64,000 nucleotides of DNA from Utricularia gibba (taxonomy: Eukaryota > Plantae > Magnoliophyta): positions 124,001 to 188,000 of the forward strand of contig NEEC01000018.1 in assembly GCA_002189035.1 (NCBI GenBank), given 5' to 3'. The notes beneath the pieces are model-generated. The model saw only the letters and a program-made list of their open reading frames with translations. It ran no database searches and was not told the origin of the DNA. A program made the translations under genes and the position numbers. Within the stretch, counting starts at the first letter, position 1. Each line of letters begins with the position of its first letter. Shown here one piece after another: positions 35,747-64,000 of this stretch.

Positions 35747-36529
35747 TCACTTGAATTCATTGCAGCCTCCATGTACGAAACACTGTCCTTTGTTCTGCAC
35801 AGCATTCTCATTGATTTGTGTCATGTCCAATAAGTGGATTGCTCTTGCTGCTTCGGATTCGGAGTCGAATCTCTGAAGAGGAAGATAAGGTTGCGTCACT
35901 GTGACCATCCCGTTGTGGTACATCAGTGGCGGCTGCTGCAGGAGTTCACTTGGATGATTCCAATCTCCTTCAATGGAAGCTGATATTTGCTCTCCAATGC
36001 TGCTTCTAGGAGGATGTGAAAGACACAAATCTGAAGAATCCCACTTCAGGAAAGAATTGTGAGAAGCATTCATTTGATTGCTGTTGCTGTTGTGAGATGA
36101 AGGGACGTTTTGTCTAAGACCAAAACGACTCTCAGAAACACAAGGCCAACAGCCATCATTTGATTCACTGACTTTCAACCCTTGTTTATCAGATTGAGCA
36201 CTTAGCATGGCAATCAAGCTCTGACTCATGAAACTTCCTGGGGGAATCTGCAACGGCGGCAACTCATCAATATCTTTCTTTGCAGCGTTCATTAACCAAT
36301 CCACCACTTTGCTAGGCTGGCTAAGCCCTAGCCGGTCTTGAAGATCGTATATCTGAATCGCAGTCGGAACTGACAATCTAACCCTCCGATCCCTCAAACC
36401 CTTAACCGTACATACCTTGCTGTGCCTATCTTTCCTCCCAAAAGCTCTGGAGGCACCAACAATTCGAGGATCTTTCATCTTTGAGGAAGACCAGGATGAT
36501 GTTTTGGGGTTTTCACTTTGACTTTTCAT
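35747..36529 (-). CDS. Class II CIN-type TCP transcription factor (TCP5/13/17 clade), single coding exon, 260 aa
   Basis: [75 protein letters not shown] is a TCP domain with the KDPRIV..SRAFG prefix of the TCP5/13/17 group. Confidence 0.93.
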
Positions 36530-45300: not shown

Positions 45301-48174
45301 TATGCGTTATGTTCATATCCTTGTTATCACCACCCTCTTTGGACGAACAGTAGGATTTAATTCCCTTTATAAGCGTGATTATTTGTTATGTGGTGTATCA
45401 TGAACAAACGATCCCTGAACTTAGGTGCCATGATTGCTGAGCAAATGACTAGAGACTATAGGCGTACAAAAATTCAACATTTGAGTTTTGGAAACATTAT
45501 TACGCATATGGCTCATACTTTATGCCCTGAGAAACTGTCTGAATTGGAATATTTTCATGTTGAGTCTAAGACAGTGCCTTTAGATGCATATTTCTTGAAA
45601 GTGGCAGGACTAATTAAAGCCCAAGGAAGTAGGTTTGTTTTTAGATCTTTGGCAGGTCTTTGCGGACAATCTATCCCTGAAGAAGGCAACACAAATGCCC
45701 CTGCTCTTGCAACCTCCAAGTACAACAGCACAGGATGCTGCTTCCCTGAAATGAGCAAAGAATTGAATGAGAAAATGTCTGATTTAATTCGTGAAGTGCA
45801 AGAATTGAAACAGGGAGTGAAAGACTCCTCCCTGAGCAAGTAACCTGCTGTTGAACTTATTTTGCGTAGTTTTATTTTATTTTTATTTTTATTTTTATTT
45901 CTTAGTTTTACTTTTACTTAGGATGCTGTTCAGGTATGTGTCTGTTAGTCTATGCTAGGAATAGTCGAGAACTTGCTTATCTGTTTTGTTTCCCGTTAGT
46001 GAATTACTTTGAATGGCCACATGATTGTACATTACAACTATGAGGTTATTTGGATGTGAGAGCTTTCTATGCCTTTTATATACCTGGGAGCATGTTTTTA
46101 CCTTCTATTTTATGAGAGCATGTGCATGAATAGAGGAACCTAGGGAGTGTAATCTAGATTAGCTTAAATTGAGTTGATGGACTTGATAATCGTCTTGGGA
46201 CAGGTTGCCAGCTTAGAAAAAAAAAAGAAGAAATGAAAAGCAGTACCGAAAAAAAATGTTGAGATCAAAGTCCTGAAAAGCAGCACATAATAGAAAAGCA
46301 TGTGCGGACTCAATAAGTGGTGAATGGGTAAGAAGGGATGGATTGATCCAGAGGAGTAGAAGGAGGCCTGGAGTTATAAGGTTTGGGTGCTTGGCAAACA
46401 CTCTTTCACAAGAAAGGCCATGACATTATACCCAGATCAATCCAGAACAAGCTGCCCTTCACTATCAAAAAAAAAAAAGAAGAAAAAAGAGAGAAAAAAA
46501 AAGGGTTGGCAACCTTAGTTCCAAGCGATTTTGAGCGAATCAACTTGAGGAAGCAATCTTCGAAAACACCTCTCAAGAAGAATTTATTCATGCACATTGA
46601 GTGATACATGACATGCACACCAGCACTCCTATAGCTCACACATCCGAATTTTGTCAAAGTTGTTTCTGTTTATCATTGGCGCTGACAAAGTTAGTTTCTC
46701 GTTAGTCTTAGCTAGGACTTGGGGACAAGTCTCGTGTCGTTGTAGCATAGTGTGATAACACACATTTTTCCTAAAATTCATAACACAAAATAGTTATATT
46801 TTATCATGATTTAGGTTAGATAAATGTGGTTTTTCATGCTTTAGTGGTGTTTATGTTAATCCTATGTCATTATGTTGAAAAGTGGACTAAATCCTTTGAT
46901 TTAGTCCACAACTCTTATTACTAACGTTTCAGTAAGTTCAGCAGGGAGATGAGCCGAAAATCAGACTTGCAAACGTGTAAAACAAGCAAAAAAGGGGCGC
47001 AAAATCCGGAGAAGGACAAAGAGCACTGTTCTGCCGCCACCGCAGTCTTCAAGTTCAAGTTGGGAACAGTGTTGGCGGTCGGGAACAGTGCTGACGGTCG
47101 GGAACAATACTAGCGGACAGAAACAGTGCAATGGAGTGAAGGAAAGGGGAAATTTATTTTCGAAAAGGAAGAGAGCGCGAAAAACATAGAGAGAGGGGGG
47201 GGGGGACGCAAGGGGTCTTCTTCCCCAACACGAAAAACCAACCAGAAGGGGGAAGAAACGCCTCCATCATCAAGAATAGTACCGGAGCCCAGTCCAGCGC
47301 TACTGTTCCGGGCTGTGAATAGTAGCTAACGGGCGGAAGAACAATCTTTATTTACTTTCTAGTTTTCTGAACATTTCGACTTTTTGCATTTTACTTGTTT
47401 ACAATGTTTCTGCCATTTTGGCCAACTTATATGAATGAAATCGTGTTTTATTTCCAAAGCATGAGTGGCTAGAGTCTTAGGGATGCCTTAAGGAGAAGTG
47501 GGTGGTATGTGTTTAGGTTGATGATGAAATTTAGTTGTCTTCCTTAACTCTTGTTCCTAACAAACCATGGGTAGACCTAAGGAGAGGAGCAAGTAGTTTC
47601 ACAACTTAGATGCTTGGTTTAGAGGTAGACCAACAAACCAAGACAAGATCAGTCGGTGTTAGTCCAGGGTAGAACCAGTAGAACCGGGTAGACCTAATTC
47701 TATATGCCTTGCATGCGGGTAGACCTAATTGCAATGTTGGTTATGATATTGGGGACTAGCTTAAGCCAAAAATATGATGAATGACCTGGGTAGACTTAGG
47801 ATATTTGAAGTTGTGAGTGTAGGAAGATAATAAATTAAGTTAGGAAGCTTAGCATAACACCACCCGCAAACCCTTAAGGCGTCCTCGTATTAGTCTGAGT
47901 CAAAACCAGTACCTGTTACCTTAGCATAGAAACCTGATATTGCTTACCTACCTTGTTTACCACTGTTAGTCCGAGCTTAGACTAAAACCTACTATTATCC
48001 GAAATCTTACATCTACTAAAATACTTAGCAAGCACAAGCTCTTCGTGATCGACCCCGACATCCACTATACAAGTTTTCCAAATTTGTATTTTGTGTAGAT
48101 TAGGGATTATAAATTTATTTGATACGGATTTTCTATTTTTATTTTCAATGATATTAGGAAATTTCCGTTTATCA
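42394..48174 (+). mobile_element. 3' half of a Ty3/Gypsy Athila element: integrase, extra ORF and 3' LTR
   Basis: PWFADLANF...YIWDDPYL, zinc-finger CH...GRHHG...C..C..CQR, ELFDVWDIDFVGPFP, AVDYVSKW, SDRGTHF, YHPQTNGQ, KLKSRWIGPF (42403-43707, with stops). Extra ORF region 44054-45843. 3' LTR 46753-48174 (TGATAACAC...GTTTATCA). 5' LTR, gag and RT are absent. Confidence 0.92.
44054..45843 (+). pseudogene. Athila additional (env-like/ORF3) reading frame, disrupted
   Basis: Located between integrase and 3' LTR. Acidic/basic N-terminal segment (44054-44659), then RYGEVKG..VIPCRHIDHDILEELGI...YIELFYEFASTF...RYVHILVITTLFGR and a coiled-coil-like end; several stops and frameshifts. Confidence 0.7.
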
Positions 48175-51100
48175 AAGCCACTTGTCCTTCTCTGAGGATT
48201 GTAACACCTAAGCTAACGAAATTGGTTCTCCATCCTTTGTAATTAAGATGAACTCATCAGGGGGATATCGAGTATTTGGTTTAGGTCCTCTCATCGACCT
48301 TCTAAGAGGTTCAACATTAGGCATGTACACCTTTGTTTCATTAGAGTTAGGTGGAGTTTCTAGTTGTAAAGCTTCTTCTACTTACAACAGTTCAGGTTCA
48401 TGGACAAGAGAGCTCGAGTTACCTTCAAGTTCTAGTGAGTCCAAATTCAAACTCACATGTTTAGTAGATTTCACATCACTCTGGTTAAAGCACTTTTGAT
48501 CTTCTAAGAATTTTACATCTTTAGATATGATGATTTTGTTTCCTTTGAAATCCCACAATTTGTATCCCAATCCTGGATCTTCATAATCCAAAAACACACA
48601 GGGTTTGGAATGGTCATCCAACTTCTTCCTATGATAATACAATATCAACACCATCATTTTGCACCCAAATATTTGTACATGCTTGAAGTTGAGTAATCTA
48701 CCTTTCCATTTTTCTTCTAGCATATTATGGTCCAAAGCTTTCTTAGGACTTCAATTGGATAAGTAATATATAGTATTTAATGCCTCACCCCAGAACTTTC
48801 AAAGTAAGACTGCTCCCTTCAACATACATCTTACCTTATCAAACAATGTTAGGTTTAGCCTCTCAGCAATTGGATTATACTGAGGTGTCCCAGATTCTGT
48901 GGCAACTTTCTTAATACCAAGTTTTTAGCAATATTTCTTAGACTCTTCATTGCAATAATCTCCTCCATTATCCGTCTAGAAGCATTTTAGCTTCAAATCA
49001 GTCTCTCTTTTCACCATCGCATGAAACACTTTGAATCATTCAAAATCTTCTAATTTCCTCTTCACCAGATAAACCCAAGTCTTTTATGTCACATCATTTA
49101 CAAAGGTCAAATATTGTCTCATAGCTGTGGGAATGTTTATAGGACCTCCAACATTTGAGAATACAATGTCCAACTTCTTTTTACTTCTATGTATATACAA
49201 CTTGAATGCAACCTTGTGCTGCTTTCCATATATACAATGCTCACATGTAGATGGTGTACCAGATAAATCTATCAAGCCATCTTTGGACAGTTGCCTAACT
49301 CTAGCTTCTGATTGATGACCCAATTGCTTATGCTAAAGAGTGTAAGACTAACCCTATACTAGTGATGGTATATATCTCTATAGAGCCTTGTTTCAACTTA
49401 GTTATGTACAATCTTCCTGTCATTGTTCCTTTTGCAACAATTATAGAGCCCCTTATAAGCTTCTATACTTGTGATCTCAAATTGTGATGATACTCTACTA
49501 CATCTAATTCTCCTGTAGAGGGTAAGTTGACCCACAAAGCAAGGATATGGTGCACCCCATGCAACTTTAGCTGGATTCCCATATTTGTAGTGACTATAAG
49601 ATCACCAATATCATTAATTTCTGAAACTGATTGGTTTCCCATCTTTACAATGCTAGCATGATAAACTTCATAGTTCAAGATTCCGGTCTTGTGAGGAGTT
49701 TCACGAAAGGATGTCATAGAATCCACAAATCAGGAATTGAAGAGACGTGTCTAACCTACTTCTGCAGCTAGCAATACAAGAAGATTATTATCAATATCAT
49801 TCAAATATGCAAAGATTTTATTCTTTGCTAGCTCTTTGGTCTTCCATTTTTTATCTTTCTCCTATTGAGCCTGTTGATAACCATAACAATCTTTGCGTAG
49901 GTGACCCTTCTTCCCACAATAGAAACATGAGTGTGATTCATACTTTTTTCATACATCCCTTGTGATTTGCCCCTTTGTTTGGACTTGTCCCTACCTCTGT
50001 TGTTGCTCTTCTCCTTAGATCTTCCTGTATTGTGTCCTTCAATGTATACTAATGTGGCTTTGAAGTTAGCATACTTCTCATCTCTTGCATTTTGCCTTAT
50101 GCGTTTCTCTTGTAGTAAAGAAGTGGCTATAGTATCATATTTGAGGTTTCTATTTGCAGGGCTGTTCTATGTGATCACAAGTGTTTCCTAAGAATCAATT
50201 AATGTATCCATGAGTTATATGGCCTGAACTTCTTCATCGAAACTCATATTCATAGAGATCATTTGATCCGCTATGTCTTTGAACTTGCTCAAATTCTCAT
50301 CATTGTACTTCAATATGAACATGCTATATTGTATTTGATAAGCTTGTTCAATGCATTATCAGGCTTAAACATCTCTTCCAATGCTTTCCATAGTTGTTGT
50401 ACATCATCATTCTCACTAATCCTATATGATAAGTTGCTATCAATGAAGAGATACATGGCAACAATTGCCTTTAGATGTAGATGCTTCCATGCAACTTCTT
50501 CAATATTGAAAGGCCTATTTGTACCAGCAATCATGAGATGCCATAGATCCTTACACACTACTATGGATTTAGAGTAGTTGGTGGTATTCAACTTTGGAAC
50601 ACCATGAACTTCATCCATACCTCTAATACCATATGCTGGAAATATGGAAATGAAGAAAGATCCCAAGTTTGATTAAATGTCCAGCATATGTCAAAGTTGT
50701 TGACATGATGCCCCAAAGGCATGTTAGTAAATTAAAAGAAAAACAATAGCAAGATTTACCAGGCAAAATCCAGAAACTGGGAAATCTCTTGGACATGGAA
50801 ACGCCAAGCAGTGAAATTCACTATGAGTTTGAGCTAAAGTACAACACTCGAAGTGTTAAATAGATCAATGATCTACAACACAAAGATACTAGTAGAGCTT
50901 TTTTGTAGCAACATATCATCGCCTTCATGCCCTCAAATAGAATTTCACCAACGCTTATCCATGGTGTGTGGTATGAAGGGTACTAGAGATGGTCTTTTAT
51001 AAGCACACGTCTCTTGCATCTTGTCAATCATAGTCATTAATGTAGAGCTATCCTGCTAACCTACAACTTTCAGCACTTCACACAAGCATGTCCATCAATC

Positions 51101-51935
51101 TTGTGCTGCCCTTGTTGACTAGCAACAGCCCTTCATGTGCGTAACTTCCATCCTGCTAGACATCATCAGTGTCTTCAACACTTGCTTCATTGTTCTTCGA
51201 TTCTCTTTCTTCAATAGAGGCTGCTATAGTCCTCTAGCAAGCAACACATGAAGTTACGTGGTGTTATAAACAAGAGGTTTCATATATAGTTGCATTGCGA
51301 TGCTACTCATAGTGAATTTTCATTATTACTTTAGAGGAATCAAGCCAAGGATGCTTCTCAGATTTTTGAGTTTTACTTGATAATCTTTTGTGTTGTGTTT
51401 GCCTCATTTACTTATGCTCCCTGGGAGCTACTTACACAATACACATTCATGTACTATAGTGCCACCATACTAGTATGCTTATTGAAGCACTAGAGTGTCA
51501 TCCCATCAAAAGAGATTTTGAGCCATTGATGTGCCATCACATATAAAGAGCTTGTAGGGCACAATAGTGCCACTTCACGAGAAGCCTTCACAACAACCCG
51601 TAGCTATTTGAGCATAGTAATCCTGGCATTATGTCATCCAACCTTGGCACTCCATGCAATAGTGGGGAACGCAGACTTTATGAGGCTTGTAGGCTTACCA
51701 ACATATCCCGCCACTTCACCCATAGAGCTTCGAATATTGATGTAGCTACTTAGAGGTGTTTACATTTGAAGGTAGTTACTATCATGAATCTCTATATTGA
51801 TAACAATTTATTATACACGATTAGTGAGTATGATGATATGCAACAATTGTAGAAGGTGAATTGCTCTAAATATTAATGAGTCAAATACCTATGATTGCTT
51901 ACCTAGAACCAACTTAAACAAGAGACATTCATTAG

Positions 51936-52860
51936 GCCTCTGATACGACATGTAAAGCCAGGAAAAGATAGAAGAGACAACTAAGGCTTCTTTTTCTTCT
52001 CCATCCTCCCCTCCCACATGATTAGAATAGATTTTTCAAATAGAATAATACCTTTGAACAACCTCATATTGTACAAGATTATGTCCAGATTGAATTATAA
52101 AAATTGTGATTCTATGTCATAACATCTAAATAGGTTCAAGGACATAGTACACTAGATGGTTTCAGTAAATGAGCTTCGACAAGGAAATTCAGGCCATACA
52201 ATTCCTAAGTACATCACTTGAATCCTGGAAACACTTCTGACTACATTGAGTAACTCAAGAACCGAAGGTTTGAAATATGATATTGTAACTACTTCATTAT
52301 TTTGAGAGAAACTCGGAAGGAGAAACACGGAATTTGAGAAGTATGTTGACTCTAAAGCCTCACTACCATCTAATGAAGAGAGTTACAAAGGAATATCTAC
52401 AGAAAGGATGAGTACTAAATGAAGAGATTTGTCCAAGCAAAGGGATAGATCTCAAAATAAGTCAGGAAAGCAGAGAAGAAGTATCAATCTAGTTCGTGTT
52501 TTCATTGTGGGAAAAAAGATTCATCTATGTAAATATTAATCTGCTTATTGAGTTCAATCCATTATAATTGAATTAATCATTTTTTTCTTATTATACTGGA
52601 GAGATTCAGAAGGGAATAAAATGACAAATTTATTTTAAGAAATTTAACTAAAGTTAAATAAAAAATTATGGAAAAAGAGATGTTCAAATACACTTGAATC
52701 TCCTCTAGTTGAAGGGCTTGGTGTAGATATTATAACTCCAACCTTGAGACGGTTCTTGAATCAAAGAATGTGTTCGTTGAAGCGTTTCTTGAAAGTTTGA
52801 TTGAATATGCAAATCAATAGATGCTAGATGCCTTGAAAGACATTAAATGCTACACTTGTT
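51936..52860 (-). mobile_element. Copia remnants (PBS-like site and RNase H/PPT end)
   Basis: ctctgatacga at about 51938-51948 resembles the reverse complement of a Met PBS, followed by TG at 51951. An RNase H-end-like motif and purine tract lie at about 52690-52760. Fragmentary; may be two elements. Confidence 0.3.
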
Positions 52861-54334
52861 TGATATTGTAATAGAAAAAAGTATGACTTTACAACAATAA
52901 TTATTGGAAATTGCTAATATCCAGAATGTGTCATGGGGTATTCCCTAACCCTATGAAATTCCATCCTTGTCACATATCAACATCATGCCCAAGGCGAATA
53001 ATTTATATAAATTAAATTTACGATAAAATCTAGCAATATAATATAGAGGTTTATCATAATTATGATATCAATTATCACAATTAATGATATTTCCTCAATA
53101 AAAAACCTTCACTGTAAGAAATTGAGTATACATATATGAGAAAGAGCAAATAATGAAAATAAAATATTACACAAAAAATTGAGAAATATATAAGGATATT
53201 TTTAGGGGAAATATAGTTCTTTATTTAGGTTTAAAACAAAATAATATTCTTATTATACTTATTAACTAAAACTAATTCTTTTATTTATTTTCTGAAGAAA
53301 ATTATAGTTTTTAACTTATCAAAAAAAAGAGACACTTTATTCATATTCATTATCTTTTTTATTAAAAGATTTTTAAAAGTATATTGACTATTTATAATGA
53401 AATAAATAATTATTTGGGATCTAACTTTTAAGTGTTCATACAAAAACAATGTTTTTTTTATAAAGTTACAAAATTATGTGATTTTCGTAATTTTTGTTTC
53501 AAAATTTAATCTCATACATTTATTTTGAATAATAGAGATACGAATATTATTTAAAAAAGAAATATGGAAATAAATGAGGAAGAGAGAAAAATGAGATAAA
53601 AAAGATGAAATAGAAGAAAATTGGATATAGAGGTGGGTATGAGTATTAGTCAACCCATTGGACCCGAGTCGACTCATGACTCGTACTCGTATGGAAATGA
53701 ATACGAGTTAAATCCACATTCACGAGTATGACTTATTCGCCAATTCAATTTAATTTTTTTAAACCAAAAAAATATTTTGGATTAATGTAATTCTATGGTC
53801 TTTCTTTGTTATCAAACTTAATTATTAGATCCAAACTCAAACCAATAAAAGATAGTATCTCATATTTAGAGTTCGAAAAGTTTTCATTCTATCATTTTCT
53901 ACGCATTTTCAGTGTAATTTTCAAATCAATTTATTATGTTATTTTGTTGCACTTCACAATTTGTGACCTTTTATCTCGATTTTTTGTTTATGTTTGTATA
54001 TAATCTTTGCATATGGTTGTATTGTCAAACCCTTCTATCTTGCGGCTGCACGATAAAAGCATTGCTATCGATGCCATGGAAATGGAGGATGAATGTGTTG
54101 AAAATGCTTGAAGAGCCTCTTCGACCTCGAACAAGTATACACAAATATTCTTCTATCTTCTTTTGCATTATACTATTAATATGATTATGTAAGTATACAT
54201 TTTTTATTTATGTTTGCTATGATTATGATATCTTGATTTTCGTGATTCAAGATAATGAAAAATTCTTCATTGTATGCTTATGAAAGTAGGACTTGTGGCC
54301 ACCTCCAAGTGGATCGATTTGTATGGTAATCGAG

Positions 54335-55789
54335 GGGGGTGTTGGCATTTGTGACCTAAAATTTTGAAATTTTAGCATTTTTGACCCATAACAAAATGAT
54401 CGGTTCGACATATTTGACCTGAACCGGTACCGGTTCAGTATATGTGACCCAAAATATTTACAAAATGATATATTTGACCTGTCAAAAATTTATTGCATGA
54501 CATATTTGACCCATAAAAAATTCAGTTTTGATACTTTTGACCCATAAAATATTATAACGGGGCATATTTGACCCAACGAAAAGTTATAAAAGTTTACGAC
54601 GGAGTCCGTTTGATCCAATAAGTTTACTGATGGTCCATGTTTAGTGTTCAGTTGGCATATTCAACTCAATAATTTGGCATATTTGACCCTTACAGTTTAA
54701 TAATCTGGCATTGTTGACCCTTAAGGTTCATTAAATTTGCATATTTAACCCAAAAAGTGTGACAAATTAACATAATTAACCCAATAAGTTTATTGAATTG
54801 GCATAAATAACCTATAAAGTTTTTCAAAATTTTAAACAAATTAAATACTTTTTGAAATAAATATTGATCAATAAGTGCCCTATAGACATGGGCACATCAA
54901 TCAATCCGAATATTCATCGTGTCAACCCACTACGATTCGAACCTGTGATGTCGTTGCAAAGTGAACTTAAGATTATTATCAGCATTTTTATACATCAGAT
55001 TTATTTCTAAACATACGATAACATGACAAATGCAAGAATTACAAAAATAATATTTTTATAAACATATGATATATGTTTCTTAAAATATAAATAATGTAAA
55101 TATGTTATTTATTAAACCATATAAAAAATATTTTTTATAAACATATGACATATGATATAGATTTATCAGCGCTCGATCCTTACACGCGACTCGGATCGAG
55201 CGCTGATGAAAAGGCCACACGGGCGTGGCTTATGCGTAAACGACGCCCGTGTGGCTTACAAGTTTATAAGCGCTCGATCCGAGTCGCGCAGAAGGATCGA
55301 GCACGGATAAAAAGGCCACACGGGCGTGGCTTGTGCGTAAACCACACCCGTGTGGCTTATAGGTTTATCAGCGCTCGATCCTTACGCGCGACTCGGATCG
55401 AGCGCTGATAAAAAGGCCACACGGGCGTGGCTTATGCGTAAACCACGCCCGTGTGGCTTACAGGTTTATAGTGCTCGATCCAAATCACGCATAAGGATCG
55501 AGCGCTGATAAAACCGGGTTCAATTATGTAGGTCAAATATGCTAAACCGGTAAACTATTTGGGTCAAATATGCCAAAATTGAAATTTTATCAGATTAAAC
55601 TTATCATTATTAAATGGGTGTGTTCTACATTAACAAAAATTCGTAGGTCAAATATGTCAATTCGTCAAACTTATGGGTCAAATATGCCCATTCACGAAAC
55701 TTTATGGGCCCGTTATGCCCCGTTATGAAAATTTCTAGGTTCTTTATATTTTAAACCCATAATTTTTAGGTCATATATGTAATTATCTC
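54335..55789. mobile_element. Non-autonomous Mutator/Foldback-like element with periodic subterminal repeats and an internal hairpin array
   Basis: 9-10-bp direct repeat GTAATCGAG(G) at 54326-54335 and 55790-55799. CATATTTGACCC-type motif repeated at about 31-bp spacing in the left arm and inverted (GGGTCAAATATG) in the right arm. No transposase ORF. Confidence 0.88.
55165..55509. repeat. GC-rich array of alternating hairpins A-B-A'-B-A-B-A', period 101 bp
   Basis: A = ATCAGCGCTCGATCC-13 nt-GGATCGAGCGCTGAT (perfect 15-bp stem in A1 and A3). B = GCCACACGGGCGTGG-CTTATGCGTAAA-CCACGCCCGTGTGGC. A units start at 55165, 55266, 55367 and about 55468. Confidence 0.97.
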
Positions 55790-56163
55790 GTAATCGAGGA
55801 AGTGAATAAATTTATAAATAATATCATTTGAATTAGGTATATTTCTAAATAAATTGTACAATCCCAGATCATGAATATCAAAAAAAGCACAGGACTCGAA
55901 TACCCCTACGGTTGATGCCAAGGAAGCCGTAATTGTAGAGTCCGATGAGTCAGGATGTTCGACAATAGAGCAATGTTACTCTTGATGCTCGGTGTCAGAC
56001 GGCATGGTAAGCTTTATGCCATGATTGAGTTTGTGTGCCACCACACCTCCATGAACAATGACAGGAATCCTAAGAAGAGGGAGATGTTGATTACTCTCAA
56101 CTTCTTATAACTCACATTAAAAGACTAACTCGCTGACAATGATTCGAAAACATAAAGCAACAG

Positions 56164-56400
56164 TTGGTGAGAGCTCCTTGTACCCATTTTTCCCTCAGTA
56201 CAATCATCTTGGGAATTTTTCAGACACCCAGCATGGACTTAGTTACTAGGACTGCTCTTCCAAATAAACCACAATATCGTATGATTCCTAGTAAGAATCC
56301 TGAGCTGAAGAGACGAGCTGAGGATCTCTTGAAGAAAGGAGATGTTGAGTAAAGTCTCAATCATATCACCTGTCATGGTCCCTCCAAAATGAGCATTGCT
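56164..56400 (+). mobile_element. Gypsy (CRM-like) RT N-terminal fragment
   Basis: MDLVTRTALPNKPQYRM...NPELKRRAEDLLKKG resembles the recalled IDLVPGA.LPNK..YRM...E..EL.RQV.ELL.KG start of Gypsy RT; ends in a stop. Confidence 0.6.
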
Positions 56401-59378
56401 CTGTCATCGAGCATCCTGACTCATGCTTCCCAGGCACCACCCGTAGGACTATTTGAGTACTGCGCTTGTTTTGGTATTCATCATCTACCATGCTACAAGT
56501 TATATAGAAATATACCTACTTCAACTTATATTATTTTACTTCCTCAATTACCATACACATCTATCCACTTTCTTCTCTCTTTCATCTAATCTATTTCATC
56601 TCTTTTTTTTTTTTTCTCTCATATTTCTCGCTCTCAAATTTATTTCCCATATTTAATCTAAAATTATTTTTTTAATTAATATTCATATGTTTATCATATT
56701 TATAATATACACATTTTATTCAAAATAAATGTATGAGATTAAACAATGCATCTTTTTTCTTTCTAAATAAGTATATCAAAAAAATATTTACTTTTTATCT
56801 AAGTTATGAATTTTATTTTACATATTTATCCACTTACGTTTTGAAAACATTAATTTATAAAAATAATTACGAAAATCATATTATTTTATAAATTTATCAA
56901 AAAACTAATATTTTACTTATCAAAACCTAAAATTTAAATAATAAATAATCATTGAATTTGTTATAATCCATTAATATAAATTTAAAATTCTTTAAAAAAT
57001 AAAAGATAATGAATTAAAAATTGATAAATATTTATTTTATATACACTTAAATCCTAAGGATATTAATTTATAAAATACTTATGAAAAAACATTGTTTTTG
57101 TATCAACAATTAAAAAGTAAATCCTAAATAATTATTAATTTAATCATAATCAATCAATATAATTTTAAAAATCTTTTCATATAAAAGATAATGAATGTAA
57201 AACTTAATAGAATGAACAAAGTATCTCTTTTTTTGTTTATAAGTTAAAAATATATTTTGTTGATTAAATATATTAGAGAATTAGTTTTACTTAATAAATA
57301 AGTATAATACGAATATTATTTCGTTTTTAACATAAATTAATAGCTATTTTCACCTATAAATATCCTAACATAATTCTCAATCTCTTGTGTCATATCTTTT
57401 TTTTTTCATTATTTGCTCTTTCTCACATATAGATACTGAATTAGTTACGGTGAAAGTTTTTTTAGAGAAAATATCATTACTTGCGATAATTGTTATCCTA
57501 ATTATGATAAACCTCCATATTGTGTTACTAGATTTCATTGTGTTTCTTCATTTGCAGATGTTGAGCGAGAGTTGATTGCAATTGATTTGAATAAAATAGA
57601 TTTCAAATTGTGTTTAACGGTACAATACTACAATTATTGAATGATCGCCAAATATATGGAAATTACTAACTATTGTTATCTTCTATTTTCATTTCATCCT
57701 AACTATGCATAGATGCCCATTGAAGCACCAACTTCAAGTGTCGGATTTGATTTAAATTTTTTGACAACTAGAATTTGGTGATTATTATGATTTCCGATAT
57801 AGTGCATATTATTAACACTCACATTTTAATTTCTCAAGGCAACCTACTGGTTTTGATGCATTTCAAAGTAATATGGTGATGATTTTTTGAGTGCAAATAA
57901 ACTATTGAAATAATAAAATAAGATCATTTTTGTAGAGAATTGTTATTGAGATTTTATTTAAACAATAATTCAAAAATGACTTAAAACAAAATAAATGATT
58001 GGATCTATAATCTACTTTGCTAAAACTTGTCGATGTATGTGAATAAACTTTAAGAAATGACCTGCTTGTGCAAGTTCTAAAGTTTTGCTGATAATTGGTA
58101 TAGCATTATCTTCTTGTTTAGTAAAATTATAGAATCAAGTACATCAAAAAAATCATTATAACCTCTACACCTTACATCTCGTAGACATATTAGATCAAAT
58201 GTGCCTTATCAACTATGTTCGATTGTCTACTTAGGTGGTTGAGGCCAATTCAAGATTTTCTCACACTCTTTTAGAGTTATATAGTATCAAAGATTACGTT
58301 GATGAAAAAATGTTGTAAAAAACAGAATCAAATTTCAAATTAAACATTAAAGAACATGATAAAATAATCACACGTGCAGGACTTGTACAAGTAAGACTTC
58401 ATTGCAAATTCTTAGTCATAAGTACCTACATGTCCATGTTCAATTTTAAGTTACAAAGATTGATGGAAAACGATATGAAATAAACCCAAAGGTACAAGCA
58501 TTGATTCTAGACTCCTAGACTGATTTAAAGACTCTGATCTCTCCTCTCACTTTCAATAACTTGGTACAAATATTTATAAAAGGATGGAGATTTGTTGAGC
58601 TTTTTTAATGTACTTATATTAAATCTTTTATTTGAATCTTGTAAGATAATATATAAATCTCTAAGAATAAGATTCAAATCTTTTAAAATAAGATATAAAA
58701 TTTATCTTATCTAATAACTTTTGACTAGGTCTTCATTCGGATATGCTAAATTTTTGCTTACCTCAAAGCTAACTTGAATTTCTTATAAATAGGCCAAAAT
58801 CATCATAAAATTTCACAAAACACACTTTTACTCTAACAAAATCAATTATCATAATACGATACAAATTAGAAGAAATAGGTAATTTTAATTTGCATAATAT
58901 TATTTATTGTTGAAATTTGCATTTACTAAACTCTGTCTAAATTTGATTTTCGTTATTTTAATTTTAAATTTGAGCTTTGATAAACTAGGTCCCAATCCAC
59001 CTCCCCCCCCCCCCCCCCGTCAAAAGTTCCTCCACCTCCGCCATTGCACTTGTAGAGTATGTTGACAATCAGCATGTATCAGCGGGAGCCTTATCTTGGG
59101 TTTACATTTGAAGCGTCAATTACACTTTTGCCCTTCTATTGTCAAAGTTCGGGTTCGGGTCGTTTGATTGAAATATAAAAAAGGGGCCCGTTCAGATTCC
59201 AAAGAAACACCAACCCCGTAATCCTTAATTTCCTGGTTTCTTCGATCCAGAGATCACCACCACGCGGCGACTTATGTTCATAGGCGGTAAATTCCTTAAT
59301 TTTTTTGTTCGAATTCCATGATGATTATTATAGCATGATGTATTTTGACCTTTTCTCCCCATTTTGGTGCTTTCGTTT

Positions 59379-59396
59379 TGTTGTTGTTGTTGTTGA
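59379..59396. repeat. (TTG)n microsatellite in the F-box 5' UTR intron
   Basis: Read directly; about six units. Confidence 0.85.
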
Positions 59397-59707
59397 AGGC
59401 TTTGCTTCACTTTTTGTCATGCTGCAGTTTATGGAAAAGTATGCGGGCTGCTCTTTTTTCTGTAATCTGGGAATTGTTTGAATTTGGCTGGGCTTATTGA
59501 ATCGCCAGTGCTTTTTTCGTGCATTTGAGATCTGTGGCCTATTCTGAACACTAATCTTGATCACTAGCAACATAATTTTGTATTGTATTTAACAAAAGCT
59601 GTACATGTTTTCACTTGGATTCAACATAAATTTGAGTTTGGTATTATTCTTTCTGGCATTTGGTTGATGTTGAAAGTAGGGTTTATTGGTTTCAGGACTC
59701 ATTGGAG

Positions 59708-60457
59708 ATGTTGTCTGAGGAAATATTGAAGGTTGTTTTACCTTTGTTGGAAGCTAGAGACCTTGCAAAGTGTATGCTTGTTTCTAAACTTTGGAGGGAG
59801 GCTGCAGAGGATGATTATCTCTGGAAGTGTTTATGTGCCAGGAGATGGCCATCAATCTGCAGGAAGTCTGAACTCCTGAACATGCCATATTTCCGGCTAT
59901 ACAGAATGTTGTGTAAACATAATAAGAGCAGGAAGTTTCTTCCTCCGAGGCTGTCCTTCACTTACTTGGACTTTTGCATTGACATCTGGTGTGAAGAGAA
60001 GCTTGTCTACTCTGAAATTGTTCCTGGAAATGTTCTACAGAATAGTGCGTTGGCTTTTCCAGGTGGAATACCTGATGTGGTTAAGTTTTATTTGTCCAGT
60101 TCAGATTACAAGATGACAATTCCTATGCAACCAAGGTTTAGTATCCCTTTGGGCCAGACAGTAAGTGTCTCTGTCCTTGTGGTTAGAAGGGACTCCCAGA
60201 AAGTTGCTTGCATCATAAACAGATCCCAGTTTGAATATATCGATAGGTCCACCTTCCGTGCCATGGCGTTCGACTACTTGGACTTCTCACCTGCACACCC
60301 CTTTGTGTCAGGTGTGAGGGCTTGGATCTCATTGCTCTTCATGGACCATAGTGATGATGGGGCTGCTGATGTCTTTGGAATCGAACTTGATTTCTGTGAT
60401 GCTGCAAACACAGAACACCAAGTATTGTGGCTTCTAGACATGCTTGATTGGCAGTGA
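59708..60457 (+). CDS. F-box protein, At5g39250-like, single coding exon, 249 aa
   Basis: MLSEEILKVVLPLLEARDLAKCMLVSKLWREAAEDDYLWKCLCARRWPSIC (F-box), then PPRLSF, EYIDRS.FRAMAFDYLDFSP..PFVSG.RAW.SLLF and DVFGIELDFCDAA....VLWLLDMLDW. The ATG follows a 5' UTR intron acceptor (TTTCAG/GACTCATTGGAGATG); the track start at 59660 is intronic. Confidence 0.93.
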   Translation: MLSEEILKVVLPLLEARDLAKCMLVSKLWREAAEDDYLWKCLCARRWPSICRKSELLNMPYFRLYRMLCKHNKSRKFLPPRLSFTYLDFCIDIWCEEKLVYSEIVPGNVLQNSALAFPGGIPDVVKFYLSSSDYKMTIPMQPRFSIPLGQTVSVSVLVVRRDSQKVACIINRSQFEYIDRSTFRAMAFDYLDFSPAHPFVSGVRAWISLLFMDHSDDGAADVFGIELDFCDAANTEHQVLWLLDMLDWQ

Positions 60458-61554
60458 AATCGCCAGTAGACAATGGAACTAGTAGCACCTGGAGCAATGC
60501 TGCTTTCGTGATATTGTTCGGTCTCTGGTTAATTCTTTGAGCAGCTACTTAAAAGCTGTGTATCCATCCTTGCTGTCTGAAGGCAGTGTATCATGTGCCT
60601 CATTCTCAAAATAAACCTGTTTTGATAACACTTTCATCCTGAAAACATCACAGGAAAGGTGGATCCATCTCCTGAAAGCTGGAATCAAAGGCTCAACTCG
60701 TGTGGTTGCTTTTATAATATTAAAATTTAATTCAGATCTTAATATTTTTAAGCCTCGACTATAACCATCTTTCTCTTGTATCTAGTATGATCTTCTATTT
60801 TTCCCAAATCAAGTTTGCTTTCTATTAAAGATGGCACTTTGTTTGCTTTATTTCTAGAGGCGATTTGCTTATCTCTGTCATCCATTCAACTTAGGATGCC
60901 ATTGGAGTTTATGGCATTTAAATTTTGAAGGGGTTGGAATCATGAATGAACAAGAGATAGATTAAATATATGTTTAGAAAAATTATTTCACAAATAGAAT
61001 TAAAAATTCTAATAAAATATAAATTAATGTATATTCTAAAATTTTTTTAAAAAATCATTAATGTAAAATTGATTCATATTTAAGATGCGAAAAAATTAAA
61101 AGAATTTTTATGGGTTTATAATATATTTATTTATCTTTATTAATAACCAGTTTTAATAATTTTATATATTATAAAATTATATTTTATGCACTATTTGTAT
61201 TATAAAAATATAATATAATATATAAATTATATTTTATGTTATTATTATATTATAATTAGATTTTTATTTTACTTATATTTTAAAATATGATTACATTATG
61301 ATTATTCATTAAAAATTGGAAAAATGATAAATTCATTTTTTTAAAATAAATTTTGATAGAAACTAATTCTTCATGATTCTAATAAAAATAAAGTGATTTT
61401 CAAAAGTACATTTTCATACAAAATAATTAAATACATATTTAAAACATAGAAATAATTTTAGGAAAATAACATTAATTTTAGAAGGCTTCCAAAGCAATGA
61501 TTTTGTTGGAGATGGATCGTTTTCATCGGAGCAGTAAGGGAACACACCAAAGTG

Positions 61555-63416
61555 GGCTTCGTCTACCTTTTACCCTTGTTAGATACCTTACATTTGTATT
61601 TTACCCTATTAAAAAATTTTTTATATAATTTACCCTAGACAAAATTTATTTGTATTTTATCTTACTGAAAAAATTTATTTACAGTTTACTTTTAGCAGAA
61701 GTTAATGAATTGACTTTATATTTTTATCAAATAGCGTATTAATAAATGAAATATATTTAAATAAAAATTGAATTAAAAATTATGAATAATTTAATTTTAT
61801 CTTTAACGTATATTCAATATAAAATAAAAAATACTTGTGATATAAATAATAATAATAATAATAATTTATGTTATATAAATAAAATATTTAATTTATGAAA
61901 AACTAAAAATAGATTTTAAAACTTTTTTATAATATTATTAAATGATTAAAACAGATAAATTATTTATCAAAATAACAATTAAAACAATTTAAAAATTTAA
62001 TATATTTAATATACAATGTTGATTCTATATGAATAAATTATATTTTTGAAAGTTTTCAGTAAAATAAAATGTATAATTAAAAATAAAATATAATATAAAA
62101 CAATTCATTTTGCTTTTTTACATTTAGACTAAAATTTTTGTCAAATTAATTTTGTCATTCAAATTACGTATATTTTATCTTATTAACAAAAATCATTTAT
62201 ATTTTACTCTATCAATAAAATTGATCTGCGTTTTACCTTATCATAAATTCAATTTAATTTTTAATTCTTTTATATGATGTAAAATCGAAAAATATAAATT
62301 ATAATAAAATAAATATACAACATAAGTATTATATAATGTAGATTTTCTATGAATGAATTATATTTTAAAGATTTTAATATAAGAATATATAATTAAAATC
62401 AAAACATTATATTTAAAAGATAACATTTCATCTGTTTTGTGGTCTCAATAGATTTCATTTATTTGACTAATAAAGTATTTTCTTGATGGTTATCTCTCAC
62501 CTTTGATTGAAATTTCATTGTCATGCATGATGATGGGAGCATTGCTGAATTTGTATTTGGCAATGAGCCTCGCGCAACAGAGTAATCATTTGCCTCATGA
62601 TCCCAATGATTTCCCTCATATGATGAATATCTAAATGTCGAGTCATTTGAAATATAAAAATTCCTTGGTAATAGAATAATATTTCGTCGTGACAGAAGAA
62701 TGAATGAAACATTGAAGATTCTTATTCATGAATGATGGATTTATAGAATTCAAATCAATGAGATTTGATTCATATGCCTCATTTTAATGACGTCTATTTC
62801 TTTGTTGATGATTTACAGGTCTCTTATGTTTTGCTGTATTATCACCACCAAGTTTAATTTCTACGTTCAAATAGATTAATTGAAAGTCGAAAAGGAACCC
62901 ACTCTTGTTTATTTCATACTAGATGAATATGAAATTTGCAAATATTTATCAAGAAATATATTTGATAATAACCATTTACTTTATCTCGTGCATTTATTTA
63001 AAACTTATGACAAATTTTCATATAAAATAATATATTAGTTCAGAATTTAAATCAATATGACTAATTAATTTACCTTTTGTGCATAACTGCATGGATATTG
63101 ATTTATTTGCTAAATTTTGCAATCACATTCCTTTTTGAAATTTAACTATACAAGTTTCTAATGAATTTATAGCTTCTAATGAATTTCAATCCTAAATATC
63201 AAATCCTATTCAAATTTAAATATTAAATTTTAAATTCAAAAAATATTAATGTATTACAAAAAGACATTTTACAATTTTGTTAAGAATATAAATATGAAAA
63301 TCATAAAGCTAAGGTAAAATTGAAAGATCCAATTTTTTGGTAATTAACAAAGCGCTTAAGAAGTTTGAGTAAATTGCAAAGTAAATAAAAACGTTAGGAT
63401 ATTTGCCCCATTTCCC
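61555..63416 (-). mobile_element. Non-autonomous Mutator-like element with dissimilar ends (copy 4, inverted)
   Basis: Left end GGCTTCGTCTACCTTTTACC and right end TATTTGCCCCATTTCCC match the two end types of copies 1-3; TTTTACCCT motifs present. No TSD found, so this could be two half-elements. Confidence 0.55.
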
Positions 63417-63513
63417 TGGAATTGGCCACATGGATGTCTCCATACCAGAATTCAATATGCGCCCCCATGTTGAACCCCAGTATAGTCGACTCATCTAAAT
63501 TTTTGATTTTATA

Positions 63514-63530
63514 ATAAATAAATAAATAAA

Positions 63531-63558
<28 letters not shown>
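63514..63558. repeat. (TAAA)n + (TA)n microsatellite
   Basis: Read directly. Confidence 0.9.
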
Positions 63559-63561
<3 letters not shown>

Positions 63562-64000
63562 TAGAAATATAAAATTTATTTTAATAGATAGATCGAAATC
63601 AATTTTAAAATATGAATATGGAATTAGATAAGCTTGGGCAAACCCATTCATTCCTTCGTTTGTGTTCTAAATCGCTGCGCTGGTTCAGCATCGGATGGTG
63701 AGCTTCGAACCCCAACTGCTTACCACTTCAACATTATTGAATTACTCAAATTACGCAAATAACTCTTACTGTTGAGTAAAACAAAAGAGATAAGCGTTAT
63801 CTTTTATAATTCTATTGGCCTCCTAATCTTTGTTAATCTGTTCGACTTGTGGGGACCAAACCGCAACTCCCCTCAACCCCAAGTATAATTATAGTCACTG
63901 GTTGCCAAGAGACAGTCAATATGAACATCGGATTATGATGATGGTACAGTCAAGTCCCATTGACAACCTGTCACTAGATCCAGGGGGCCCTCCTACTCCT

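What the first reader, a model, noticed from the sequence alone, without database searches (positions are those of the whole stretch)
55165..55509. Regular array of two hairpin types with an alternately flipped loop (REP/BIME-like architecture) inside a plant Mutator-like element
Seen: seven stem-loops in the order A-B-A'-B-A-B-A' at 101-bp spacing, giving a 202-bp higher-order unit. Stems are 13-15 bp and CpG-rich in otherwise very AT-rich DNA. A loops alternate in orientation: TTACACGCGACTC (+), GAGTCGCGCAGAA (-), TTACGCGCGACTC (+), AAATCACGCATAA (-). All B loops keep one orientation (CTTATGCGTAAA), and the A and B loops share a TTAyGCGy core. Linkers are short and conserved. Established knowledge: alternating inverted palindromes are typical of bacterial REP/BIME arrays, loop inversions between short inverted repeats are known from plastomes, and some Arabidopsis MULEs (VANDAL) carry tandem target arrays for element-encoded anti-silencing proteins. 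Inference: this may be a structured cis-module of the TE (cruciform or ssDNA hairpin recognition, protein docking, or a small-RNA source), and the A loop may be an invertible micro-segment. The simplest origin is one loop inversion followed by dimer duplication. I do not recognise this motif from any described element.
Basis: partly seen in the sequence, partly recalled or inferred. Interest (0 to 1): 0.8.

Follow-up and report, generated by a model that had tools for sequence, protein, structure and literature searches.

The report
Hairpin minisatellite inside a Mutator-like transposon
A small jumping gene in a plant genome carries a short tandem repeat made of two kinds of GC-rich hairpin, one of which points alternately left and right; this pattern is real, but one small inversion followed by one duplication explains it, and nothing yet shows that it does a job.

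Summary
Window 55162-55513 is a 101-bp tandem repeat of 3.5 units, A-B-A'-B-A-B-A', made of seven CpG-rich hairpins. The A loops alternate in orientation and the B loops do not. The 202-bp dimer is real: dimers are 92% identical, against 86% for neighbouring monomers.

The array lies inside a 1,454-bp non-autonomous Mutator-like element (54336-55789). This element has a 10-bp target-site duplication and 17 inverted subterminal repeats. A contig from another public run shows the precise empty site, so the insertion is polymorphic. Read depth shows the element family is multicopy, and both hairpin types occur elsewhere in the genome. Elsewhere B also forms 61-bp arrays with an unrelated 21-nt spacer in place of A.

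In this copy all 9 stem changes break pairs and none is compensated. Most loop changes are C>T. A2 and A4 share derived changes. This history fits one spacer inversion inside hairpin A followed by a dimer duplication.

No homology to bacterial REP/BIME was found, no Rfam family reached threshold, and no listed RNA run holds the array.

Best reading: a young, decaying, palindromic minisatellite internal to a transposon. A role as a protein-docking or small-RNA module is neither shown nor excluded.

The parts
54326..54335 (.). Left copy of the 10-bp target-site duplication, GTAATCGAGG
   Evidence: Identical 10-mer at 55790-55799. An X7 contig joins 54325 to 55790 with 10 letters fitting both sides.
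54336..55789 (.). 1,454-bp non-autonomous Mutator-like element. No ORF of 90 aa or more overlaps 46000-64000 within it; the longest internal ORF is 87 aa and lies in the array.
   Evidence: TSD plus empty-site contig. Depth is about 5-50 times the flanks in X1, X3 and X7. Eleven X7 contigs break at 54336 into unlike flanks. ORF lists.
54336..54812 (-). Left arm: 12 subterminal repeats of about 30-31 bp with core GGTCAAATATGCC, all on the minus strand. The end reads GGGGTGTTGGCATTTGTGACCT.
55162..55513 (+). Hairpin array, 3.5 units of 101 bp, equal to 1.75 units of the 202-bp dimer [A+ B A- B]
55162..55210 (+). Hairpin A1, loop TTACACGCGACTC (+)
   Evidence: -18.1 kcal/mol, z -6.9
55214..55255 (+). 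Hairpin B1
   Evidence: -18.4 kcal/mol, z -4.9. One pair-breaking C>G.
55263..55311 (+). Hairpin A2, loop GAGTCGCGCAGAA (inverted). Three stem mismatches.
   Evidence: -9.4 kcal/mol, z -1.8..
55315..55356 (+). Hairpin B2. It is the centre of the long foldback that the whole array can form.
55364..55412 (+). Hairpin A3, perfect 18-bp stem, loop TTACGCGCGACTC (+)
   Evidence: -20.2 kcal/mol, z -7.6
55416..55457 (+). Hairpin B3, the best-kept B. This is the part with the highest depth in other runs.
   Evidence: -22 kcal/mol. depth bins 55420-55490.
55464..55512 (+). Hairpin A4, loop AAATCACGCATAA (inverted, four C>T changes on the loop's own strand). One-base deletion in the stem.
55531..55789 (+). 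Right arm: 5 subterminal repeats on the plus strand. The reverse complement of the end reads GAGATAATTACATATATGACCT.
55790..55799 (.). Right copy of the target-site duplication, GTAATCGAGG

Best explanation
The array is a young minisatellite in the internal, non-coding part of a non-autonomous Mutator-like element. Its unit joins two unrelated palindromic modules: A (18-bp stem, 13-nt loop) and B (19-bp stem, 4-nt loop).

The alternating A loop needs only two events:
1. The spacer between the arms of one A hairpin was inverted. This is the known outcome of intrastrand template switching, or of recombination between short inverted repeats, and the same process keeps the arms perfect.
2. The resulting A+ B A- B dimer was duplicated by slippage or unequal exchange.

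The array then travelled with the element as the family multiplied. In this copy it is decaying, largely by C>T and G>A changes at CpG.

Shown: the anatomy, the element borders, insertion polymorphism, multicopy status, the order of events, and uncompensated decay.

Inferred: the template-switch mechanism, and the absence of any dedicated function.
For: - Array and hairpins.
- Dimer structure: 92.1% dimer-to-dimer identity against 86.3% at a monomer shift and 80.5% inverted. A2 and A4 share two derived changes, loop C>T at position 22 and stem G>T at position 44.
- Decay: all 9 stem changes in A1, A2, A4, B1 and B2 break pairs, with 0 compensated. All four changes in the A4 loop are C>T, three of them at CpG.
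- Host element: 10-bp TSD, empty-site contig, depth 5-50 times the flanks, and multiple different flanks. These match the MULE features given in PMC5225508: long TIRs, 8-10 bp TSD, subterminal repeats and heterogeneous internal sequence in non-autonomous members.
- Youth: CpG o/e is 1.58 in the array and 0.95 in the rest of the element, against 0.53 in the window. This fits a young insertion.
- Other copies: B is followed by a 21-nt spacer and another B, giving a 61-bp period, in X1, X6 and X7. A variant inverted A loop, GAATCATGTGTAA, occurs in X7. An X1 contig spans B-A-B-A-B with 29 differences and 22 gap letters. Such dynamic, modular arrays behave like minisatellites.
- Mechanism: spacer inversion and arm homogenisation by template switching are described in eukaryotes (PMC8604942, PMC8794818 abstracts).
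- Function: no RNA run listed holds the array, and no Rfam family reaches threshold.
Against: - The array is far more CpG-rich than the rest of the element. Two different hairpins share a TTAYGCG apex motif, which hints at a recognised sequence.
- Only one full copy could be read. The compensation test rests on 9 changes, and template switching would itself mimic or erase compensation.
- Copy number and loop orientation across the family could not be tabulated, so conservation across copies is unknown.
- Absence from the listed RNA runs says little about small RNAs.
Confidence: 0.6

Rival explanations
1. The array is a cis-acting docking platform. Its hairpins, or their shared TTAYGCG apex motif, would be repeated binding sites for an element-encoded protein (transposase or an anti-silencing factor), as the tandem repeats of Arabidopsis VANDAL elements are for VANC. 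The CpG-rich stems might serve as a methylation-sensitive switch.
For: - The array abuts the innermost right subterminal repeat, 17 nt away.
- The TTAYGCG core sits at the apex of both hairpin types.
- Both hairpins are multicopy.
- MULE non-coding tandem repeats are known VANC targets that turn over quickly (PMC5735166, PMC10398659).
- CpG o/e is 1.58.
Against: - VANC motifs are arrayed in one orientation at high density (PMC5735166). Here the motif orientation alternates.
- No autonomous partner or accessory gene could be examined.
- Stems decay without compensation, and the A1, A2 and A4 apex motifs are already mutated.
- Sibling arrays drop A altogether.
Confidence: 0.2
2. The array is a hairpin-RNA source. 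Read-through transcription would fold the alternately oriented units into a stem of about 165 bp centred on B2. Dicer would cut it into small RNAs that silence (or are exploited by) the family, in the manner of the maize Mu killer inverted duplication.
For: - The RNA fold is -250 kcal/mol with z -23, one nearly continuous stem. The DNA fold has z -17.7.
- A sub-threshold structural match to a long MIRNA precursor model (MIR3454, 45.5 bits against a gathering score of 142) reflects the same foldback.
Against: - No listed RNA run holds the array.
- No promoter or transcript evidence.
- Any tandem array of palindromes folds this way by construction.
- The Rfam scores are far below threshold.
- The Mu killer comparison is from my own knowledge and was not tested.
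Confidence: 0.1
3. The array is captured foreign DNA. It would be a piece of an independent genomic satellite (the 61-bp B-plus-spacer repeat) or another CpG-rich host sequence, picked up by the element as Pack-MULEs pick up gene fragments. A would have been added later. This rival concerns origin only and is compatible with the best explanation on function.
For: - B occurs elsewhere with a different, unrelated 21-nt spacer.
- GC content is 54% against 29% in the rest of the element.
- Non-autonomous MULEs carry heterogeneous internal sequence (PMC5225508).
Against: - It is unknown whether the 61-bp arrays lie inside or outside members of the same element family.
- The depth of B is about the same as that of the element arms, not far above it. 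That fits residence inside the family rather than in a large satellite.
Confidence: 0.25
4. The A loop is an actively invertible micro-segment (a flip-flop switch) in living plants.
For: - The perfect 18-bp arms around a 13-nt spacer are the substrate for such inversion.
- 'Opposite strands' joints appear in X7 contigs.
Against: - A2 and A4 share derived changes, and A1 and A3 share theirs. So the orientations were fixed before the dimer duplicated and have stayed fixed since.
- The joints each rest on one contig, at 80% likeness, in a multicopy palindromic family. They are the expected alignment artefacts.
Confidence: 0.03

Closest known systems
Internal and subterminal tandem repeats of DNA transposons (non-autonomous MULEs, foldback-type elements such as Muta1 derivatives and Galileo)
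   Same: A short tandem array in the non-coding interior of a TIR element, next to the subterminal repeats. It appears to vary between family members, and the host element has a 10-bp TSD and long repeat-built arms (PMC5225508; PMC4168063 abstract).
   Different: The unit is built from two CpG-rich perfect hairpins, one of which alternates in orientation. I found no description of this motif. The element's superfamily is inferred from its TSD and ends only.
VANC-target tandem repeats of Arabidopsis VANDAL (MULE) elements
   Same: Fast-evolving tandem repeats in non-coding parts of Mutator-like elements that carry a short recurring motif (PMC5735166, PMC10398659).
   Different: VANC motifs are 8-9 nt, AT-rich, non-palindromic and arrayed in one orientation. 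They sit in autonomous elements that encode VANC. Here the motif sits at hairpin apices, in alternating orientation, in a non-autonomous element with no known protein partner.
Bacterial REP/BIME arrays
   Same: Imperfect palindromes in alternating orientation, separated by short conserved linkers.
   Different: This is a eukaryotic nuclear transposon. No sequence relative was found in 185,579 prokaryotic species genomes, in plasmids or in E. coli. Only every second hairpin alternates. There are only 3.5 units, explained by one duplication. No RAYT-type enzyme is in view.
Inverted-repeat spacer inversion by template switching (also known from plastid hairpin loops)
   Same: A 13-nt spacer is exactly reverse-complemented between intact, homogenised 18-bp arms (PMC8604942, PMC8794818).
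   Different: Here the inverted form was then fixed in a higher-order repeat and spread by a transposon. The plastid cases are from my own knowledge and were not tested.

Membership tests
Mutator-like element (host element) | Target-site duplication of 8-10 bp (PMC5225508) | tested here: met
   10-bp GTAATCGAGG on both sides. An empty-site contig shares 10 letters across the join.
Mutator-like element (host element) | Long terminal inverted repeats (>100 bp), often built of subterminal repeats | tested here: met
   12 minus-strand and 5 plus-strand copies of a repeat of about 31 bp form arms of 477 and 259 bp. The outermost 21 nt match at only about 12 positions.
Mutator-like element (host element) | Family relationship to an element encoding a MuDR/MULE transposase with the same ends | not testable with these tools
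   No tool searches this plant genome, and no copy of the element lies elsewhere in the window. The resemblance of the right end to maize Mu ends is from memory, and a text search for that end found nothing.
Mutator-like element (host element) | Mobile, multicopy family with different flanks | tested here: met
   Depth is 5-50 times the flanks. Eleven X7 contigs diverge at 54336. One contig carries the precise empty site.
REP/BIME | Sequence family of extragenic palindromes in a bacterial chromosome | tested here: not met
   The window is plant nuclear DNA, with TCP, F-box and retroelement genes. The A stem pattern has 0 hits in prokaryotic genomes. The B pattern has 18 scattered single hits in unrelated GC-rich bacteria. 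Blastn finds nothing in E. coli or plasmids.
REP/BIME | Successive palindromes alternate in orientation | tested here: not met
   Only A alternates. All three B units keep one orientation, shown by the constant C:A mismatch and TGCG loop.
VANC-type target array | Short motif at high density in a single orientation | tested here: not met
   The TTAYGCG core faces +, -, +, - in A, and reads on both strands in B. The criterion comes from PMC5735166.
VANC-type target array | Cognate element-encoded binding protein | not testable with these tools
   The element is non-autonomous and its family could not be retrieved.
Inverted-repeat spacer inversion | Spacer exactly reverse-complemented between conserved arms | tested here: met
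   When reverse-complemented, A2 and A4 align to A3 over all 49 positions. Their loop changes are A>C plus C>T in A2 and four C>T in A4.
Minisatellite / tandem repeat | Head-to-tail units, with unit number or composition varying between copies | tested here: inconclusive
   Head-to-tail units are shown. Contigs with B-spacer-B, a partial B between two A units, and an A4-like unit followed by B suggest variation. These are single short contigs from unknown loci.
MIRNA / hairpin-RNA locus | Match to a curated family, or evidence of transcription | tested here: not met
   The best Rfam match is MIR3454 at 45.5 bits against a gathering score of 142. No listed RNA run holds the stretch. Small-RNA data could not be examined.

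The most novel reading that the evidence does not exclude
The two CpG-rich hairpins are a family-specific cis-module of this Mutator-like family. They would be extruded as cruciforms or single-strand hairpins and recognised at their shared TTAYGCG apex by an element-encoded protein. In that case module swapping (A against the 21-nt spacer) and loop flipping would be the way the family changes its recognition code. This would be a structural counterpart of the VANC-motif arms race.
Probability: 0.12. Interest if true: 0.65.

Novelty: new variant of a known kind. Interest (0 to 1): 0.3.

Why it matters
As it stands, this is a tidy worked example of how a seemingly designed architecture can arise from two ordinary mutations and then be spread by a transposon. 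Regular hairpins with an alternately flipped loop look designed, yet one spacer inversion in a hairpin and one duplication are enough. That is a useful caution when reading REP/BIME-like patterns in eukaryotic DNA.

It would matter more if the hairpins proved to be recognition sites. Structure-based, rather than sequence-based, docking sites in plant transposons are not described, and the family seems to be recently mobile in a very compact genome.

Tried and rejected
- **Metagenome scan.** I scanned for a 9+9-nt A-stem pattern. It was too loose: 119 or more single chance hits in bacterial contigs. None has B, and one has the 13-nt arm word. The scan was wasted.
- **Prokaryotic and viral scans.** The A pattern found nothing and the B pattern found 18 scattered chance hairpins. 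Blastn against E. coli genomes and plasmids found nothing. A bacterial or viral origin is rejected.
- **Rfam.** Only sub-threshold structural matches appeared: MIR3454, Brucella sRNA CI27 and others. These are artefacts of any GC-rich hairpin pair.
- **ARAGORN.** No tRNA was found, so the tRNA-like look of 54930-54950 is not supported.
- **Sibling copies through predicted proteins.** The 87-aa ORF across the array has no relative in the protein database.
- **The same locus in other assemblies.** I looked up exact proteins of neighbouring ORFs (F-box, an 82-aa ORF, TCP). None is on record. The F-box search gave only relatives of 71% identity or less.
- **Homology between hairpin A and the 21-nt sibling spacer.** Alignment scores sit at the shuffle mean. 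Rejected.
- **Origin by mirror duplication around B.** Rejected. The A-to-B and B-to-A linkers are not mirror images (AAG against TTACAGG), and B exists without A elsewhere.
- **Earlier scan notes.** Lookups by sequence found nothing.
- **Maize Mu end.** A text search for the Mu terminal sequence found nothing.

Full report
**1. The observation**

Tandem Repeats Finder gives one array at 55162-55513 with period 101, 3.5 copies, 83% matches and score 473. The repeat finder lists the arms.

- A hairpins lie at 55162-210, 55263-311, 55364-412 and 55464-512. Their arms are up to 18 bp (TTTATCAGCGCTCGATCC / GGATCGAGCGCTGATAAA) around a 13-nt loop.
- B hairpins lie at 55214-255, 55315-356 and 55416-457. 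Their arms are 19 bp with a constant C:A mismatch, around TGCG.

The A loops read TTACACGCGACTC, GAGTCGCGCAGAA, TTACGCGCGACTC and AAATCACGCATAA. When A2 and A4 are reverse-complemented they align with A1 and A3 over their whole length.

Each hairpin folds on its own as DNA at -9.4 to -22 kcal/mol. Six of seven have z between -3.1 and -7.6; A2 has z -1.8. The arm words occur nowhere else in the window and far exceed chance.

The array has 54% GC and CpG o/e 1.58. The rest of the element has 29% and 0.95; the window has 34% and 0.53.

**2. What surrounds it**

The array lies in a 1,454-bp element at 54336-55789.

- The 10-mer GTAATCGAGG flanks the element on both sides, at 54326-35 and 55790-99.
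- The left 477 bp hold 12 copies, all on the minus strand, of a repeat of about 31 bp with core GGTCAAATATGCC. The right 259 bp hold 5 copies on the plus strand. The arms are therefore long inverted repeats built of subterminal repeats.
- The array starts 17 nt inside the innermost right repeat.
- No ORF of 90 aa or more lies in the element.

I laid contigs of four public DNA runs on 54000-56100, with three results:

- One X7 contig joins 54325 to 55790, with 10 letters fitting both sides. This is the precise empty site, so the insertion is polymorphic or recently arisen.
- The summed contig word depth (the tool warns it is no copy number) inside the element is about 5-50 times that of the flanks in X1, X3 and X7. 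Eleven X7 contigs break at 54336 into unlike sequence. The family is therefore multicopy, with different flanks.
- The borders fall exactly at the TSD.

A 10-bp TSD, long arms with subterminal repeats and non-coding, heterogeneous interiors are the features listed for MULEs and their non-autonomous derivatives (PMC5225508). Superfamily membership still rests on these features alone, because no transposase-bearing partner could be sought. The right end reads GAGATAATTACATATATGACC, which I recall as similar to maize Mu ends. That is memory, not a test (one search found no text to check it against).

The F-box gene at 59708-60457 has its best relatives, about 70% identical, in Lamiales. This fits an earlier, unchecked scan note that the genome is Utricularia gibba.

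**3. History of the array**

The second dimer matches the first at 92.1% over 151 nt. It matches at 86.3% at a one-monomer shift and at 80.5% in inverted orientation. A2 and A4 share two derived changes relative to A1 and A3: loop position 22 C>T and stem position 44 G>T. B1 and B3 differ by one base, while B2 differs from B3 by two.

The order of events is therefore:

1. an AB repeat existed;
2. the second A had its spacer inverted;
3. the 202-bp A+ B A- B unit was duplicated, and the last copy is truncated after A-.

Only two events are needed for the 'regular alternation'. Spacer inversion between short inverted repeats, together with homogenisation of the arms, is a described outcome of polymerase template switching in eukaryotes (PMC8604942, PMC8794818). 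I infer that mechanism; it is not shown here.

A mirror duplication around B is unlikely. The two linkers are not mirror images (AAG against TTACAGG), and B exists without A elsewhere.

**4. Selection or decay**

Relative to the best-kept units A3 and B3, there are 9 changes in stems (in A1, A2, A4, B1 and B2). All of them break a pair and none is compensated. All four changes in the A4 loop are C>T on the loop's own strand, three of them at CpG. A2 keeps only a 9-bp core.

This is the pattern of a young, CpG-rich sequence decaying by deamination. The sample is small, and a template-switch process could restore arms without selection. The test therefore argues against visible constraint in this copy, not against any function in the family.

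**5. Other copies**

One search also shows that both hairpin types exist elsewhere.

- The bin over B3 and A4 has 36 times the flank depth in X1. The A-only bins have about 3-10 times the flank depth.
- Several contigs in X1, X6 and X7 carry B followed by a 21-nt spacer (consensus near CATACGCAGCAGCACGACAAA) and then B again, a 61-bp period.
- That spacer has no detectable similarity to A.
- One X7 contig carries an inverted A loop with decayed CpGs, GAATCATGTGTAA, after a B.
- One X1 contig spans B-A-B-A-B with 29 differences and 22 gap letters.
- Other single contigs show a partial B between two A units, or an A4-like unit followed by B.

The arrays are therefore modular and seem to vary. 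I could not place these contigs in the genome, count units or tabulate loop orientation, because no tool here searches the plant assembly.

Run X3 behaves like a bisulfite library. Every listed C in the left flank reads T, whereas no fully converted position is listed inside the element. This hints that the element is methylated, but the table is truncated, so I draw no conclusion.

**6. Function**

Nothing links the array to a function.

- No listed RNA run holds it.
- Rfam gives only sub-threshold structural matches.
- There is no relative in prokaryotic genomes, viral contigs, plasmids or E. coli.

If transcribed, the array would fold into one stem of about 165 bp centred on B2 (RNA -250 kcal/mol, z -23; DNA z -17.7). 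Any tandem array of palindromes does this, however.

The best-documented role for tandem repeats in the non-coding parts of MULEs is as targets of VANC anti-silencing proteins. Those motifs are short, non-palindromic and arrayed in one orientation (PMC5735166; PMC10398659). The shared TTAYGCG apex of A and B is the only hint of a recognised motif here, and its orientation alternates.

I rate the readings as follows:

| Reading | Confidence |
|---|---|
| Function-free, TE-internal palindromic minisatellite | 0.6 |
| Protein-docking module | 0.2 |
| Hairpin-RNA source | 0.1 |
| Active flip-flop | 0.03 |

The active flip-flop is weakest because orientation has stayed fixed since the dimer duplicated.

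**7. Comparison and novelty**

The array works like, and I file it as, an internal tandem repeat of a DNA transposon. Its architecture resembles a BIME, but it fails both membership tests that I could run: there is no bacterial sequence family, and only one of the two palindromes alternates. It also fails the orientation criterion for a VANC-type array.

I found no description of this motif, but I could not search TE libraries. It is best called a new variant of a known kind, of modest interest.

**8. Verdict**

The pattern is real, lies in a recently mobile Mutator-like family, and is multicopy. Its striking regularity reduces to one hairpin-spacer inversion plus one duplication, and this copy is decaying. 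Interest 0.3. The structural cis-module reading remains possible at about 0.12 and would deserve about 0.65 if shown.

Noticed in passing
window 54325/55790: An X7 contig carries the exact empty site of the 1,454-bp element, with 10 shared letters. The insertion is therefore polymorphic among sequenced samples of this species, which suggests recent mobility of the family.
   Followed up: partly
sibling loci, known only as contig fragments laid at window 55354-55457: A 61-bp tandem repeat made of hairpin B plus a 21-nt spacer (near CATACGCAGCAGCACGACAAA) exists elsewhere in the genome in several diverged copies. Its genomic location is unknown, and so is whether it lies inside the same element family.
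   Followed up: partly
window 54000-54345 versus 54336-55789, run X3: Run X3 behaves like a bisulfite library. Every listed C in the left flank reads T, while no fully converted position is listed inside the element. This hints at an unmethylated flank next to a methylated transposon, but the table was truncated.
   Followed up: no
window 55065-55135: This AT-rich 70-bp bin has an enormous summed contig depth: about 107,000 in X3 and 650 in X6, against tens to thousands nearby. The contigs run off into unrelated sequence. It is probably a look-alike in a very high-copy sequence (organelle or satellite) or bisulfite-made low complexity.
   Followed up: no
window 54419-54438, 55515-55555: An 18-bp perfect palindrome, TGAACCGGTACCGGTTCA, lies in the left arm. 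AACCGGT-type words recur near the inner edge of the right arm. This may be a second repeated motif of the element.
   Followed up: no
window 59708-60457 (+): An intact single-exon F-box gene like At5g39250. Its best relatives are about 70% identical and come from Lamiales (Phlomoides, Buddleja, Orobanche, Sesamum; Genlisea at 63%). This places the genome in a fast-evolving Lamiales lineage.
   Followed up: partly
window 42445-45843 and 48248-50666; 56164-56352: Retroelement remains lie around the locus. ORFs at 42445-45843 match integrase (rve), ATHILA ORF1 and Transposase_32 domains. Fragmentary ORFs at 48.2-50.7 kb were not scanned. A short stretch just right of the element reads like reverse transcriptase (...QYRMIPSKNPELKRRAEDLLKKG).
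   Followed up: no
window 35747-36529 (-): An intact TCP-family transcription factor ORF of 260 aa (Pfam TCP, E 1e-28).
   Followed up: no
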